This document shows, piece by piece, positions 11,192 to 41,579 of a stretch of 64,000 nucleotides of DNA (within the stretch, counting starts at the first letter, position 1; each line of letters starts with the position of its first letter). The position numbers and the translations under genes are program-made. The notes under the pieces are model-generated. The model was not told the DNA's origin and made no database searches. It saw nothing but the letters and a program-made list of their open reading frames with translations. Source of the DNA: Salpingoeca rosetta (taxonomy: Eukaryota; Protista; Choanoflagellata); contig JAWQFM010000034.1 in the NCBI GenBank assembly GCA_033442325.1, forward strand, positions 376,728-440,727, read 5' to 3'.

Positions 11192-14100
11192 CTATGGCTG
11201 CTCCTTCAAACGCACATCGCTGAGGCGTTTGAATGACGGCCGGCCGCGCGGGTGCTGGTCCATGCAGTCCCGTGCAAGCGCTTTGAACCACAGCGGTATC
11301 GCGCCTGATGCGAAGCGGTGTGATGTGAATGCACGATGACAGACCTTGCATCGTGAGTGGCCGCACAAGAGATTGCGGGAATATAACCATCAACATCGCG
11401 TGCGCCTGCTTGCACACAGCACACAATGTGGCAACTGTACCATCCAACCACATATGTCTACAAACACACACGCACAAGCTCACACACGCACACGCACACG
11501 CACACGCACACGCACACGCACACGCACACGCGCACACAAGCTCACACATAAACACGCACGCACACACACGCAAGCACGCACGCGCGCGCGCAATGCAGCC
11601 ATCTTATGCCGACTCACCATCAGTATCGTCAAACTTGAGTCGGATGCCTTGGTCCATCAAGCTCTTCAGCGTGGCGAGGATTGGTCCTCGATACCCGCTC
11701 CCCTTCTCCTGCTCAATCAGGTCTGGCACCCGCTGCATCGCCACTTCCCACATGAGTACGCCAAAGCTGAACACGTCGGCCTCAAAGCTGTATTTGTCAC
11801 CCACCAATGCCTCTGGTGCCATGTACAGCGGCGTCCCCACACCAGCCGTCAGTGTCATGCTCGTCATCGTCTGCAGTCCAGCTTGCTGGCTGTACCGGGG
11901 ATCATCGCTTGAAGTGGAGGAGAGGCGTGTGTGCCGCTGATTCCGATCTCGCGTGAAGCACTGGCGAATGGATCCGAAATCCGTAATCTTGGCGCGGAGC
12001 GACGATGACACCAGCACGTTGCCGCTCTTCAGGTCTCTGTGGGGAAGGGAGAGGGGGTGCAAGTGAGAATAGGCCGGTAAGGTGAGCAAGTAACACGTGC
12101 TTGCATGCACAAGCAAGCACGCGGCACACACACACACACACACACACACACACACACACACACACACACACACACACACACACACACACACACACACACA
12201 CACACACAACACTGACCGGTGCATCTGGTCGAGGCTGTGGATAAATGCCATGCCACTCGCGACGTCACGCAGCAGTCGCAGCTTCAAGTCCCACACACTG
12301 TTCACATCATCGCGGCCAGCACCACTCTCCTCAAACTTCCTGTTCTTCACCTCCCTCAACACTTGCTCCATATCTTTCCCCAACAGATCTCGCAGGGACC
12401 CGAGTGCCACAAACTCCAGCACCAGGAACGGGCTGCCGTTGGGGTCTGTGCCCGCGCCAAAGAAGCGCACCACATTCGGGTGCCGTGTCTTCTGCAAGAA
12501 CTCCACCTCCTTCTCAAACTCCACCACCATCGTGTCATCAAGAAGCATCAAACTCTCCTGCATCACTTTGACCGCCACCGTCACCGTGTCCCACTCGGCC
12601 TTGAACACCACGCCAAACGCGCCCGCAGCAACACGCTTGATCATCCTCAACTCATCGTACTCAATCTCCCACGCCTTCTTCAGTGCCATCACTTCTTCGT
12701 CTCGCGCCACCAGCAGCTGCTCCTGTAAGTCGATGCGTTTGGTCAGGCCACGGTAGCGGCGTGACAGCCAGGCGACGAACAGGCCAAAGAACAGCCCACC
12801 AATCACAGAGCCAGCAGCCACGCCAGCAACATCTGGGTTGTCCACCACACACCGCCCACCGGACGTCATCTTGAAGCCCCGCGCGCACGTGCAGTCGTAG
12901 TTGTAGACAACCTCCGTGCTCACTGCAAACTTTTGCCCGTTCACACGCAGGAGCTCGTTGCCAAACCGAATGGCGCACTCGATAGGCGTGTTTTGCAGCT
13001 GCAGCACGGGGGGATTCGTGCGTGTGCGCACAAAAATGCCTGAAATGGACAGGGAGCGGTGTGACAGGGCAACAATCTCGCCCGCCACGCTGTTGACAAC
13101 GGATGGCATGTCCAGCCAGGGGTTGCCGGACAGGTCAATCACATCCACAGTCTGCAGGCACCGGAACAGCACGGGAGGGAGGTTGCCCAGCCCTCGCTGC
13201 AGCAGCAGGTTGCGGGCGAAGAGGACGCGGCGGCCCCACCGCGTGCAGATGGCAGCACTCGGGGTGACACGCGTCTCGCTCACGTCCAGCACCTCGACCA
13301 GCGGCGCGTCCAGGCTGGTCAACGCGTTGCACCCAGACATGTTGAGAGCGCGCACGCTGCCGGGGATGGACACGGCTGCCACGTGCTTGTTGTCCTGCAA
13401 CAGGACGGAGTCGAACGTCTTGTTGGGGCAGAGGGTGATGGCGGCGTAGCGCGTGTTGGAGAGGGCAAAGTCGATGACGTTGTCGGCGAGGATGTGGCAC
13501 AGCGCGGCGGTGTCGACCGTGGTCTCGTCCATGTCGCTCCATCCGAGATGCAGCCGGTCAATGTTGAAGACGCGGCCGCGGCGGAGGTTCTGCACGAGGT
13601 TTCGGATGTCCACGTGTTGCAGGTGGAGGCTGGTCAGCTCCGATGGCGGCGGCACCGCATCACTGCCGCTGTTGCCACTGCCACTGTTGCCACTGCTGGT
13701 CTGTGCCGGGTGGACGATGGCGGTCGAGTGGACGCGCGGGTCGGCGTCAAGCTGCAGGATGTGCAGCGGCGTGTGGCGCGTGAGGATGGACAGGTCGAGA
13801 ACGGGGATGAGGTGCTGCGATAGGCGCAGCTCGTCCAGAACTGGAAAGTCTTCAAGGTGTGGCAGCTCGCGCATGGGGTTGTTGCGCAATCGCAGGATGG
13901 ACAGGGACGGGATCGGTGTGCGAAAGTGCGCAATGTTGTTGCCGTCCAGCACCAGCCCCGTCAGCGCGGTCATGTTGTCAAACAGGCCGTCGACAGACTG
14001 CAGCTGGTTGCCGGACAAAAACACCACACGGAGCATGGTCATGTGGCGAAACAATCCTGGTGGTACAGACGTCAGCTGGTTGTTCTGACAGCGGAAGTCC

Positions 14101-39070: not shown

Positions 39071-41579
39071 TCACTCAGCAGCCGGGAAGAGGGTGTTGAT
39101 GGTGGCGCGGAAGGCGGCGGCGTCTGCCGTGCGCGAGAACCACTCCTCCTCTGGCACCTGATCCGGGGACGCAGCGGCAAACACGCCGCCAATGAACGCA
39201 GCGCGCGAGCAGTTGTCACCTGGCCAAGTGTTGTGTGAGTGAGTGAGTGAGTGAGTGAGTGAGTGAGTGAGTGAGTGAGTGAGTGAGTGAGTGAGTGAGT
39301 GAGTGAGTGAGTGAGTGAGTGAGTGAGTGAGTGAGTGAGTGAGTGAGTGTGTGAGTGAGTGAGTGTGTGTGTGTGTGTGTTGCATGCGCGTGTGTGAGTT
39401 GCACGCGTGTTGTTTGTGATGCAAAAACACGCCATGAACAACCGCAACAGCCCCCTCCCCTAAACGCGGACAACCACCACCACCTCACCTCCGAGCTTGA
39501 TGTTGGTCCTGACGGCCTCCTTGAAGGACGACGACTGCAGGATGACGAGGAGAGAGAGCTTGAACGCGCCCGGATACGAGCAGGAGATACCCCACTTCTT
39601 CGACAGCGCTGCAATGTCGCCGTCTGCTTGCAGGATTTTCGTGCGTGCGTGTATGCGTCAATGTGTGTGAGTGAGTGTGTGAGTATATGTGTGTGTACGT
39701 GGGTGAATTGTTGAAGTTGTTGAAGTTGTTGTTGTTGTTGTTGTTGTTGTTGTTGTTGTTGTTGTTGTTGTTGTTGTTGTTGTTGTTGTTGTTGTTGTGT
39801 GAGCGTGTGAGGGTGTGTTTCACTTGAGTGCATGGATGTGCGTGTGTCCATGAGTGTGCGGGCCCGTTTCGGTGCAGATCACCGGACATCAAAGACAGCC
39901 CAAACGATTTCAATAACCAGCAACGTTCACGCCCGTCACACACACACACACACACACACAAGTACACACCTTTGTTTGCGAGGACGTCGGTGATGTCGGC
40001 CTTGGTGGTCGCGTCGAGGCTGTCGGACGACTCCGCCGCCTTGATCGCATCCCCCACCGTCGCCCCGTCAAGCACCTGCTCAGCAGCCGTGCATGCAGGC
40101 AACACGTGTGTAAGGCGGTCGCGTATCGGTTGTGGCGGCCTGTTTCTGCGATTCGGCAGGACCAACGCAAGCAACGAGAGAACAAGCAAACGAACAGCAC
40201 TCTGCACACACACATAACCCCCCCCCCACACACACACACACAGCGCACGTTCTTGGTGATGATGGCGGCAGCGAGGCCATACTGCACGGCGGAGGGGCGG
40301 GACTGCATCAGGGCAACGGCGGCCTTGGCGGTGGCAACAAAGTCGTCTGCCTTGCCAAACGCGGCCGCAATGAGCGGGGCCTTGGCCATACCGTTGGCTG
40401 GTGATCAAGTGTGTTTGTGAGCGTGTGTCAATGTGCGGGCGTGTGTGTCAATGTGTGCGCGTGTGTGTCAATGTGCGCGCGTGTGTCAATGTGTCAGTGT
40501 GTGTGTGTATCAATGTGTGTGTGTGTGTGTGTGTGTGTCAATGTCAAGAAACGGACTTTCGATGACTACCACCACTGCTGTTGCTGCAGTACCGCTTCCG
40601 TCCTACTTGACCGTCCTACTTGACCCTCCCCCTCTCCTCCTGTCTGCTGCGCCTCACCTTGGTTGTCGTCCTTGTCGGCGGTGTCTGGGTAGGTAGCTCC
40701 CTTGGCAGCGTTTGCCTCGAGCGTCTTTGTGACGTGGTTCTTGTACCCTTTCCACGACGCGAAGAACTCGCACATTTCCTTCAGTGTCACACCATGCAAG
40801 GTGGACACGTGTGTGATGGAGACTATGAAGTGAAACTCACACCGAACACAGTGCAAGATGATACGCGAAAGTACGCAAAAAGAACATCAGACAGGCAGAC
40901 AGACAGACAGGCAGGCAGAGAGAGAGAGAGAGAGACAGAGACACACACACACCTACACGCATACACCTACATGTATACACACACCCCTACATGCACACAC
41001 GCACATACGCACACACACACACACCTTTTCGACGGCCTTTGGGTCGAGGGTGCCCTTGTTGGCTGCATCCGTTTTGGCCAGGCCATTCAGCATGGCCACG
41101 TACTCGCCACCATAAGGGGAGAGGTCGCCGACTTTCGCCTGTGCAGATACGCATGAACACGCATATTCTTCTGAGCATGTGCCTATTGACAACTTCACCA
41201 ACAAGACATAACCACCTACATGACACAACCAGCAACCCACACACATCCACACGCAGCCACACACATCCATCTACATGCACCGACACACATCCACCTCCAC
41301 ACAGTCACACACATCCACCTCCACACATCCACCTACACACAGCCACACACATCCACCTTCATACAGCCACGCACACAAAGCATCCCCCTTCCGCTCCCTT
41401 TTCCGCTTGCCAACCTCGTAGAAGGGGCACTGGGGCTTGCTGCAAAACTCTGGCTCATCCACAATGCCGTTCTCCTTCAGGAAGGTGCTCAGCTTTGCCA
41501 CGTCGTACACCCAGTGCAGCGGCGTGGTGGCCGCATCCGACAGCAGCCCTCCGACAACACAAGCCCGACGCGCGCTCAT
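39071..41579 (-). CDS. ADP-ribosylglycohydrolase family protein, J1-crystallin/selenoprotein J-like; about 7 exons
   Basis: Spliced motifs [21 protein letters not shown]|[17 protein letters not shown]|[30 protein letters not shown]|[12 protein letters not shown] and VPEEEW. Confidence 0.8.
39235..39365. repeat. Intronic (GAGT)n microsatellite; representative of many (CA)n, (CT)n, (TTG)n (39727-39797) and (AT)n (48577-48632) tracts
   Basis: Directly visible simple repeats, almost all in introns or intergenic DNA. Confidence 0.9.

What the first reader, a model, noticed from the sequence alone, without database searches (positions are those of the whole stretch)
11192..41579. Candidate NAD+/ADP-ribose-centred innate-immunity island
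Seen: eight consecutive genes, none obviously housekeeping: LRR-TKL receptor, TIR/HET-TPR, Roco-ART, LRR-ANK, a second TIR/HET-TPR, F-box/LRR-like, secreted beta-propeller, and ADP-ribosylglycohydrolase. Conserved housekeeping genes (MCPH1, RAB3GAP2, RRM) begin immediately afterwards. Established: TIR NADases, ARTs and ARH erasers all act on NAD+/ADP-ribose, and LRR, TPR and ANK repeats are the standard sensors in plant, fungal and bacterial immunity. Inference: a clustered writer (ART), NAD-cleaver (TIR/HET) and eraser (ARH) system with variable sensors, analogous to defence islands. The solo LTR and recent exon duplication fit a fast-evolving locus.
Basis: inference. Interest (0 to 1): 0.75.

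Follow-up and report, generated by a model that had tools for sequence, protein, structure and literature searches.

The report
Mosaic cluster of expanded immune-like genes
In the choanoflagellate Salpingoeca rosetta, eight neighbouring sensor-and-enzyme genes form a real cluster, but it is a patchwork of separately duplicating multi-copy families plus one old single-copy gene, not one integrated NAD+/ADP-ribose system.

Summary
The eight genes are real. They are S. rosetta PTSG_10353-10360, mid-scaffold on C34, followed by BRCT and RAB3GAP2 genes.

Domain calls mostly hold:
- LRR receptor kinase
- two TIR-like+TPR genes
- LRR-Roc-PARP-like gene
- LRR-ANK gene
- an unclassified "F-box-like" gene
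- a stalk-propeller gene
- a PF03747 ARH-like gene

"HET" and "F-box" fail Pfam, and no solo LTR was found.

Six of the eight genes belong to large families: at least 62 TIR-like, 13 Roco-PARP, 46 F-box-like, 111 propeller and 60 LRR-kinase copies. Some gene pairs recur elsewhere more often than permutation predicts. The full five-family combination occurs only here, and that is only marginally unusual (P=0.04, post hoc).

A 5.4-kb F-box-like/propeller cassette has an 80-97% identical copy on C14, and that copy excludes the ARH gene. The ARH-like gene is single-copy and old. It lacks three canonical metal-binding aspartates and lies near no other Roco-PARP gene. The writer/cleaver/eraser system is therefore not supported.

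Genome-wide, TIR, macro and PARP genes do cluster with these variable families, so an immune-like repertoire remains plausible.

Earlier notes of this scan flagged the Roco-PARP and propeller families on other DNA.

The parts
11604..15851 (-). LRR receptor kinase: signal/ectodomain LRRs, TM helix and kinase, with an in-frame TG-microsatellite intron in the kinase. Member of a family of at least 60 copies.
   Evidence: Pfam LRR_8 1.8e-44 and PK_Tyr_Ser-Thr 3.4e-35. The TM segment is seen in the translation. There are 60+ paralogous ectodomains at 30-42% identity, at least 17 of them on C27.
16282..18694 (+). TIR-like N-terminal domain (split by an intron near 16692-17042) fused to KLC-type TPR repeats. 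This is PTSG_10354 (P0002, 692 aa).
   Evidence: TPR_12 2.4e-79 and the database record P0002. The fold of homologue P0050 matches TIR domains. The W-C-L-x-E glutamate is invariant. The first exon has at least 62 copies in the genome.
19436..25700 (-). Roco-type gene with RI-type LRR exons (23631-25700), a Roc GTPase (21540-23114) and a PARP-like ADP-ribosyltransferase (19436-20710). Assembly gap 24048-24147 lies in an intron.
   Evidence: Roc 29.1 bits and PARP 27.1 bits; PF00644 28.5 bits here and up to 41 bits in paralogues. There are 12 collinear Roc / conserved linker / PARP-like paralogues at 68-77% nt. H and Y of the triad are conserved in paralogue L018.
26300..29100 (+). RI-type LRR + ankyrin gene made of short exons. 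It holds tandem 254-bp exon+intron cassettes at 26660-27274. Assembly gap 26560-26659 lies at the array's 5' edge.
   Evidence: Ank 9.5e-11 and LRR_6 weak. The cassettes are 99% and 93% identical. The ANK exon has an 80% copy at C14:1322054-1322335.
30347..32760 (-). Second TIR-like + TPR gene, 41% identical to the first over exon 1.
   Evidence: TPR_12 2.7e-53. The N-terminal exon with the same motifs is seen.
34204..36801 (-). 'F-box-like/LRR-like' protein of unknown family. It lies head-to-head with the propeller gene. The family has at least 46 loci.
   Evidence: No Pfam family. Language-model neighbours are F-box/LRR/FNIP clusters at 0.88, which is a lead only. Paralogue list.
37124..38531 (+). 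Stalk-and-propeller protein with a signal-peptide-like start, a coiled coil and a beta-propeller. Its coding sequence is broken by assembly gap 37295-37394 and changes frame just after it.
   Evidence: DUF5074 5.6e-13 and DUF6923. There are at least 111 paralogues, and the C14 copy is 98% identical with an open 540-aa frame.
33233..38605 (.). Segment with a recent duplicate at C14:1311241-1316644 (80-97% nt). It holds only the F-box-like and propeller genes.
   Evidence: DNA search of the own genome. The C14 match ends before the ARH gene and before the TIR-like exon of gene 5.
39074..41579 (-). ARH-like gene of seven exons. This is PTSG_10360 (P0001, 312 aa). It is single-copy and belongs to a non-canonical subfamily.
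   Evidence: PF03747 2.6e-31 over the full length. The seven exons are mapped and there is no close paralogue. Orthologues are listed. Metal-ligand motifs are replaced.
41883..42833 (-).
   Evidence: BRCT 8.2e-07.

Best explanation
The 30-kb run is a real but composite cluster. It was put together by local and segmental duplication from several lineage-expanded sensor-plus-effector gene families, and it sits next to an old single-copy ARH-like gene that is only a neighbour.

Its recurring building blocks are:
(a) a TIR-like+TPR gene lying tail-to-tail with an LRR-Roc-PARP-like gene;
(b) a TIR-like+TPR gene beside an F-box-like gene;
(c) an F-box-like gene head-to-head with a stalk-propeller gene.

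Shown:
- the domain content;
- the family sizes;
- the recurrence of these pairs elsewhere;
- the independent duplication of block (c);
- the uniqueness of the full combination;
- the non-canonical, unlinked ARH-like gene.

Inferred:
- The families form part of a genome-wide, fast-evolving recognition and conflict repertoire.
- Repeat domains (TPR, LRR, propeller) bind ligands.
- NAD+-using domains deliver the output: the TIR-like domain through its invariant glutamate, and the PARP-like domain under the control of a Roc GTPase switch.
- Each protein acts as its own sensor-effector, rather than as a step in a locus-wide writer/eraser circuit.
For: - Domains.
- TIR-like fold: Foldseek top hits are plant TIRs. 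All 50 re-aligned top rows are TIRs at Z 5.0-6.8. In the unbiased search of 48,161 chains, nearly all rows with Z>=5 are TIRs or the related NDT/DprA folds. Pfam TIR_2 gives E=0.01. The glutamate is invariant in 51/51 and 56/56 sequences.
- Family sizes.
- Roco-PARP with TIR-like within 15 kb: 4/13, against 0.4 (uniform null) or 0.96 (within-contig null), P=2e-4 or 0.008. P=0.03 when distance to the scaffold end is preserved.
- F-box-like with TIR-like within 5 kb: 12/46 against about 1. F-box-like with propeller within 5 kb: 12/46 against about 3. Both P<2e-4.
- Whole combination: this is the only place with at least 4 of the 5 families in 35 kb. The null expects 0.9 such places, and 0.04 places with all five.
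- Independent cassette.
- ARH-like gene: single-copy, old, unlinked to ART or TIR genes elsewhere, and lacking canonical metal ligands.
- Genome-wide NAD/ADP-ribose theme: 8 of 13 macro loci lie within 5 kb of a propeller gene. 9 of 46 canonical TIR_2 loci lie within 5 kb of one of these families, against 2.6 expected.
Against: - There is no expression, challenge or biochemical evidence, so an immune or conflict role is inference only.
- The structural Z-scores for TIR are middling (at most 6.8). A profile of the family does not hit two canonical S. rosetta TIR exons, and Pfam TIR_2 is below threshold.
- Family hit lists are lower bounds and several contig lengths were estimated, so the permutation P-values are approximate. 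This window's own locus contributes one count to each observed value.
- The Roco-PARP / TIR-like association weakens to P about 0.02-0.03 once the subtelomeric position is controlled for.
- Two of the genome's three ARH-family genes lie within 11 kb of an F-box-like/propeller pair. This leaves a small chance that the ARH adjacency is meaningful.
Confidence: 0.6

Rival explanations
1. The eight genes form one functional NAD+/ADP-ribose immunity island: Roco-PARP writes ADP-ribose, the TIR-like proteins cleave NAD+, the ARH erases, and the LRR/TPR/ANK/propeller parts sense.
For: All three enzyme classes lie within 25 kb. TIR-like and Roco-PARP genes are neighbours at three other loci within 15 kb. 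Macro-PARP and canonical TIR genes also cluster with the propeller and F-box-like families. A canonical ARH on C2 lies 7.5 kb from another F-box-like/propeller pair.
Against: The ARH-like gene is single-copy, and none of the other 12 Roco-PARP loci has one. Its orthologues in other lineages sit among unrelated genes. Three canonical metal-ligand aspartates are replaced across the whole subfamily. The combination is unique in the genome. The F-box-like/propeller block was copied without the ARH or TIR-like genes. No co-regulation data exist.
Confidence: 0.1
2. Duplication hot spot only. Multi-copy families pile up in the same dynamic regions through tandem and segmental duplication. The adjacency has no functional meaning, and the families serve unrelated roles such as prey or bacterial-cue sensing, adhesion or signalling.
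For: Six of the eight genes belong to families of 13 to more than 110 copies, concentrated on a few scaffolds (C4, C25, C27). With contig-level enrichment kept, about 0.9 places with at least four families are expected and one is seen. The orientation and order of the recurring pairs vary between loci. There is a recent segmental copy.
Against: The pair associations exceed within-contig nulls. The pairs persist between copies only 50-65% identical in protein. Earlier notes of this scan report canonical TIR and PARP fused in single Roco proteins elsewhere in this genome. That was only partly checked here: a TIR_2 hit lies 4.4 kb upstream of the C13 Roc exon.
Confidence: 0.27
3. Assembly artefact. 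The three gaps join unrelated pieces, so the run is not contiguous in the real chromosome.
For: There are three N gaps inside the interval, all beside microsatellites or tandem repeats.
Against: Each gap lies inside a single gene whose parts on both sides belong together. LRR exons of one Roco gene flank gap 1, exons of one LRR-ANK gene flank gap 2, and the propeller's signal exon and body flank gap 3. The last pair is collinear in the C14 copy. Public gene numbering is consecutive.
Confidence: 0.03

Closest known systems
Plant and animal NLR / R-gene clusters
   Same: Tandemly and segmentally duplicated sensor-effector genes with repeat sensors and TIR-type effectors. They are often subtelomeric, fast-evolving and mixed with unrelated families.
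   Different: No NB-ARC or NACHT module is present. The TIR-like domain is joined directly to TPRs, and the only switch domain present is a Roc GTPase in a different protein.
Bacterial defence islands (for example Thoeris ThsB TIR, or the ADP-ribosyltransferase/macro pair DarTG)
   Same: NAD+-cleaving and ADP-ribosylating genes are co-located with variable sensors. ThsB is among the best structural matches.
   Different: These are eukaryotic, intron-bearing, separately transcribed genes. The evidence is within one genome only. The candidate eraser is not recurrently linked and lacks canonical catalytic ligands.
Fungal HET-domain and NLR-like allorecognition genes
   Same: A TIR-related death or effector domain is fused to TPR/ANK/WD repeats in large, variable families.
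   Different: Pfam HET does not match, and there is no NACHT/NB-ARC.
SARM1 and other catalytic TIR NADases
   Same: Same fold class, with a glutamate four residues after a conserved tryptophan. From memory this resembles the W-x-x-x-E stretch around the catalytic glutamate of SARM1 and plant TIRs.
   Different: The sequence is below the Pfam TIR_2 threshold, the equivalence of the glutamate was not shown by superposition, and activity is untested.
Roco proteins (LRRK2, Dictyostelium Roco kinases)
   Same: LRR followed by a Roc GTPase, a conserved linker and an enzymatic output.
   Different: The output is a PARP-like ADP-ribosyltransferase instead of a kinase. Pfam does not detect COR here.
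ARH1/ARH3/DraG ADP-ribosylhydrolases
   Same: Full-length PF03747 fold match at 109.8 bits.
   Different: SPYG replaces TDDT and GGDNCS replaces GGDTDT. This resembles inactive or repurposed members such as the trypanosome mitoribosome assembly factor mt-SAF23, which has a similar C-terminal motif.

Membership tests
TIR domain | TIR-type alpha/beta fold | tested here: met
   Model of homologue P0050 (pLDDT 83). Foldseek top hits are RPP1, SNC1 and RPS4 TIRs. All 50 re-aligned top rows are TIRs at Z 5.0-6.8 with 100-137 residues aligned. In the unbiased search, nearly all rows with Z>=5 are TIR, ThsB, NDT or DprA.
TIR domain | Sequence match to Pfam TIR or TIR_2 above the curated cut-off | tested here: not met
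   TIR_2 gives 16.7 bits against a cut-off of 28 (E=0.01) for P0050. The TIR_2 scan of the genome finds 48 places, none in the window. The family profile does not hit two canonical TIR exons.
TIR domain | Catalytic glutamate in the position used by NADase TIRs | tested here: inconclusive
   The glutamate of W-C-L-x-E is invariant in 51/51 and 56/56 sequences and present in both window copies. Its equivalence to the SARM1 or plant catalytic residue rests on the motif, not on superposition.
HET domain (PF06985) | Match to the Pfam HET profile | tested here: not met
   No hit exon by exon and none in the six-frame genome scan. The tool warned that its control genomes lack HET.
PARP catalytic domain (PF00644) | Profile match above the cut-off | tested here: met
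   27.1 bits and 28.5 bits against a cut-off of 26.7. Paralogues reach 41 bits.
PARP catalytic domain (PF00644) | H-Y-E catalytic triad | tested here: inconclusive
   H (WHGC) and Y (GIYLT) are visible and conserved in paralogue L018. E (FEEYV) is seen only in the window copy. There is no alignment to a solved PARP (one search found none).
Roco proteins | Roc GTPase followed by COR | tested here: inconclusive
   Roc scores 29.1 bits against a cut-off of 27. No COR family passes E<0.01, although the Roc-to-PARP linker is conserved and collinear in 12 paralogues.
ADP-ribosylglycohydrolase (PF03747) | Profile match over the full length | tested here: met
   P0001 gives E=2.6e-31, 109.8 bits, covering positions 1-285 of 287.
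ADP-ribosylglycohydrolase (PF03747) | Acidic ligands of the two-metal site (TDDT and GGDTDT motifs) | tested here: not met
   In profile alignments, SPYG aligns to MJ1187 TDDT, and GGDNCS aligns to GGDTDS/GGDTDT/GGDADT of solved ARHs. The replacements are conserved across 15 orthologues.
F-box proteins | Match to F-box or F-box-like profiles | tested here: not met
   No Pfam family at E<0.01. There are only language-model neighbours at 0.88.
Defence or immune gene island | The same genes recur as neighbours more often than chance | tested here: inconclusive
   Pairs recur. The eight-gene or five-family ensemble occurs once, with 0.9 places holding at least 4 families expected by chance.
Defence or immune gene island | Co-regulation on challenge, and presence/absence across strains | not testable with these tools
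   No expression data or second genome of the genus was reachable. No paper mentions these locus tags.

The most novel reading that the evidence does not exclude
S. rosetta carries a genome-wide, physically co-clustered recognition arsenal without NLR-type switches. NAD+-using effectors are linked to hypervariable binders. The effectors are at least 62 TIR-like+TPR genes, 13 Roco-PARP genes, macro-PARP genes and about 46 canonical TIR loci. The binders are at least 111 stalk-propeller, 46 F-box-like and 60 LRR-kinase genes. The TIR-like+TPR architecture is itself a very large, undescribed eukaryotic family, with about 5,000 clusters at 50% identity. This window would then be its densest single patch.
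Probability: 0.3. Interest if true: 0.8.

Novelty: new variant of a known kind. Interest (0 to 1): 0.5.

Why it matters

If these co-clustered families are conflict genes, they would show that NAD+ cleavage and ADP-ribosylation were coupled to expanded repeat sensors before animals arose. That coupling would use direct TIR-like+TPR and Roc-switched PARP designs rather than NLRs.

The practical result for this finding is narrower. The locus is a good place to clone neighbouring sensor-effector pairs. It should not be treated as an operon-like writer/eraser system, and its ARH-like gene belongs to a separate, old, probably non-hydrolytic subfamily that deserves its own study.

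Tried and rejected
- Exon-by-exon Pfam scans of the ARH and TIR-like exons found nothing useful. The PF03747 six-frame scan missed the window gene because its exons are short. The gene was recovered only through the public record P0001.
- phmmer of the PARP exon, ARH exon 1 and P0050 against PDB sequences gave nothing usable.
- The Pfam HET scan gave no hit.
- The TIR-like profile against two canonical S. rosetta TIR exons gave no hit.
- I tried to fetch all paralogous loci to tabulate their neighbours and build co-duplication trees. 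Most of these flanks held none of the eight families.
- Synteny with Monosiga brevicollis could not be tested. No named orthologue of the ARH-like gene was returned, so the ARH-BRCT test was not possible. Contexts of more distant orthologues were uninformative.
- Literature searches for the locus tags, for Roco+PARP in choanoflagellates and for S. rosetta TPR expansions found no paper. Richter et al. 2018 (PMC6040629) list Ank, Arm, SH2 and kinase as TIR partners in choanoflagellates, but not TPR.
- The solo LTR was not found in the three stretches searched at DNA level.
- Spliced models were not joined. Exons were searched by reference only, and the full-length proteins used are database records returned by the search tool.

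Full report
ORGANISM AND PLACE. The window is G000:C34:376728-440727 of Salpingoeca rosetta. The word search returned the public records PTSG_10360 (P0001) and PTSG_10354 (P0002) for genes in the window, on a scaffold of 740,817 bases. The locus is therefore mid-scaffold. Introns are full of TG/CA microsatellites. Exons were searched by reference, and the only full-length proteins used are records that the search tool returned.

GAPS FIRST.
- Gap 24048-24147 lies between TG and CA microsatellites in an intron between two RI-type LRR exons of the minus-strand Roco gene. No reading frame crosses it, and it could hide an exon.
- Gap 26560-26659 follows a TG/CTGT microsatellite and touches the first of three tandem 254-bp exon+intron cassettes of the plus-strand LRR-ANK gene. 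These are 99% and 93% identical. The first exon's acceptor site and the number of cassettes are therefore unknown.
- Gap 37295-37394 is not in the long minus-strand open frame that appears to run through it. That gene starts near 36801. The gap sits inside the plus-strand propeller gene, between a signal-peptide-like first part (ATG near 37124) and the body.
- The 97% identical copy on C14 is collinear across this point, with about 15 nt between the flanks, and has an open 540-aa frame. The window copy has stops in the propeller frame and a frame change within about 60 nt after the gap. Whether this is an assembly error or a real lesion cannot be decided.

THE EIGHT GENES.
1. 11604-15851(-): five LRR_8 stretches, a TM helix and a kinase.
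2. 16282-18694(+): an N-terminal domain split by one intron, then TPR_12/TPR_10 repeats.
3. 19436 to about 25700(-): RI-type LRR exons, Roc (29.1 bits) and PARP-like (27.1 bits). PF00644 also scores the paralogues up to 41 bits. H and Y of the PARP triad are conserved in a paralogue, and the E is visible in the window copy. Pfam does not call COR.
4. About 26300-29100(+): RI-type LRR exons and an ankyrin repeat.
5. 30347-32760(-): a second copy of the gene 2 design.
6. 34204-36801(-): no Pfam family. Language-model neighbours are F-box/LRR/FNIP clusters at 0.88, which is only a lead.
7. 37124-38531(+): DUF5074/DUF6923 propeller.
8. 39074-41579(-): seven short exons that no exon-wise scan recognised. 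They encode P0001, a full-length PF03747 match at 109.8 bits.

BRCT and RAB3GAP2_C exons follow. A Hint-domain secreted protein precedes the run.

IS THE N-TERMINAL DOMAIN TIR OR HET? Pfam HET finds nothing. I modelled P0050, a 361-aa homologue without TPRs, using 51 family members as its alignment (pLDDT 83).
- Foldseek's best rows are plant TIR domains, at weak E-values.
- After re-alignment, all 50 top rows are TIR domains (SARM1, MyD88, RPP1, RUN1, ThsB, SPARTA) at Z 5.0-6.8 over residues 168-346.
- In the search of 48,161 representative chains that does not lean on Foldseek, nearly all rows with Z>=5 are TIRs or the related nucleoside deoxyribosyltransferase and DprA folds.
- Pfam TIR_2 reaches only 16.7 bits, and the family profile does not find two canonical S. 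rosetta TIR exons.
- One glutamate, in W-C-L-x-E, is invariant in every sequence examined and present in both window genes.

I therefore call the domain TIR-like by fold. Strict family membership and NADase activity are unproven. The family is very large. It has 5,012 cluster representatives at E<=0.001 among 1.84 billion, and 50 of 56 sampled carry TPR_12.

THE ARH-LIKE GENE. It is single-copy, and the nearest paralogue is 32% identical, on C14. Orthologues exist in other choanoflagellate transcriptomes (51% and 43%) and in green algae (35-37%). In two of those genomes it lies among unrelated genes such as NAT10 or bestrophin. In profile alignments to solved ARHs, the subfamily's conserved SPYG aligns with TDDT, and GGDNCS aligns with GGDTDT. 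Three canonical metal-ligand aspartates are therefore absent. This argues against a dedicated, active eraser for a lineage-specific Roco-PARP.

FAMILY SIZES. Six-frame searches of the whole genome give lower bounds:
- 62 TIR-like first exons;
- 13 Roco-PARP genes, with Roc, linker and PARP collinear in 12 paralogues;
- 46 F-box-like loci;
- 111 propeller genes;
- about 60 LRR-kinase ectodomains.

For nine of the 13 Roco-PARP genes the distance to a scaffold end could be measured, and it is at most 64 kb. Two more (both on C27) are probably also near ends. The window copy is one of two internal ones.

PERMUTATION TESTS. Coordinates were taken from those calls. Nine contig lengths were exact and the rest were estimated.
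- Roco-PARP genes have a TIR-like gene within 15 kb at 4 of 13 loci. Expected values are 0.4 for uniform placement (P=2e-4) and 0.96 for shuffling within contigs (P=0.008). P=0.03 when distance to the scaffold end is preserved.
- F-box-like genes have a TIR-like gene within 5 kb at 12 of 46 loci (about 1 expected). They have a propeller gene within 5 kb at 12 of 46 loci (about 3 expected). Both give P<2e-4.
- Roco-PARP shows no association with F-box-like or propeller genes.
- Taking five families together, this window is the only place with four or more of them within 35 kb. The within-contig null expects 0.9 such places, and 0.04 with all five (P=0.04, chosen post hoc).

Sub-blocks therefore recur, but the island does not.

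MOSAIC ORIGIN. A DNA search shows that window 33233-38605 has an 80-97% identical copy at C14:1311241-1316644. This segment holds exactly the F-box-like and propeller genes with their flanks. The copy stops before the ARH gene and before the TIR-like exon of gene 5. On C14 an ankyrin exon 80% identical to that of gene 4 lies about 5 kb further on, next to a canonical TIR_2 hit. This is roughly the position where the window has its second TIR-like+TPR gene. The TIR-like/Roco part has no recent copy.

- Macro domains (13 loci) lie within 5 kb of a propeller gene at 8 loci, against 1.25 expected (P<5e-5). Most are on C4, with weak PARP hits between the macro and propeller genes. These look like macro-PARP genes convergent with propeller genes.
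- Canonical TIR_2 loci lie within 5 kb of one of these families at 9 of 46, against 2.6 expected (P=6e-4).
- Earlier notes of this scan had already flagged, on other DNA, about 13 Roco-PARP genes near contig ends, Roco proteins that also carry a TIR, a family of over 100 stalk-propeller genes, and a TIR-TM-propeller gene. My counts agree with the first and third. The others I checked only by coordinates.

VERDICT. The run is non-random in the sense that multi-copy sensor-effector families co-cluster in this genome. The specific claim of a coordinated writer/cleaver/eraser island is not supported. The most likely reading is a composite patch of an immune-like, fast-duplicating repertoire, lying next to an unrelated conserved ARH-like gene. 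All functional statements are inference. No expression, polymorphism or biochemical evidence was available.

Noticed in passing
G000 C4 (for example 556820-559744, 760155-764405, 1080080-1085521, 1971142-1975523) and C25:292147-294426: Macro-domain genes, several with weak PARP hits just downstream, lie convergent with stalk-propeller genes. 8 of 13 macro loci are within 5 kb of a propeller gene (P<5e-5).
   Followed up: partly
window 33233-38605 and C14:1311241-1316644: A 5.4-kb segmental duplicate (80-97% nt) holds only the head-to-head F-box-like/propeller pair. The identity gradient runs from 97% at the propeller end to 80% at the far flank.
   Followed up: partly
window 16282-17500; P0050; 5,012 representative clusters: The TIR-like N-terminal domain has no Pfam family but is very widespread, and 50 of 56 sampled relatives carry KLC-type TPRs. 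Relatives include an acoel worm protein and many metagenome proteins.
   Followed up: partly
window 39074-41579 (P0001): An ARH subfamily with conserved HWIYD, CPFYE, SPYG and GGDNCSR motifs is shared by choanoflagellates and green algae. Conserved cysteines replace metal-ligand aspartates.
   Followed up: partly
G000 scaffold ends: C24:1202-1205 kb and C20:1227-1230 kb: Two Roco-PARP copies give identical scores and spacing against the window gene, which suggests near-identical subtelomeric duplicates. At least 9, and probably 11, of the 13 copies lie within about 65 kb of a scaffold end.
   Followed up: no
G000 C27 (215-1015 kb): At least 17 paralogues of the LRR receptor-kinase ectodomain lie on one scaffold, and three more on C34 at 527-574 kb.
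   Followed up: no
G000 C2:2647436-2661124 and C14:1549747-1559643: The genome's two other ARH-family genes also lie close to these families. One is 7.5 kb from an F-box-like/propeller pair, and the other is 7 kb from an LRR receptor kinase.
   Followed up: no
window 26660-27274: Three tandem 254-bp LRR exon+intron cassettes (99% and 93% identical) start exactly at an assembly gap, so the array may be collapsed.
   Followed up: partly
window 37395-37450: The propeller gene changes frame about 60 nt after the gap, whereas the C14 copy has an open 540-aa frame. This is either a sequence error at the gap edge or a real frameshift.
   Followed up: partly
window 9112-10404 and 61032-63248: A Hint-module secreted protein lies just upstream of the run, and a Peptidase_M43 (pappalysin-type) gene lies near the window's end.
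   Followed up: no
window 2000-6000, 48000-50000, 58000-60000: AT-rich islands (32-42% GC against about 57%) hold long open frames without any Pfam family. They may be mobile elements.
   Followed up: no
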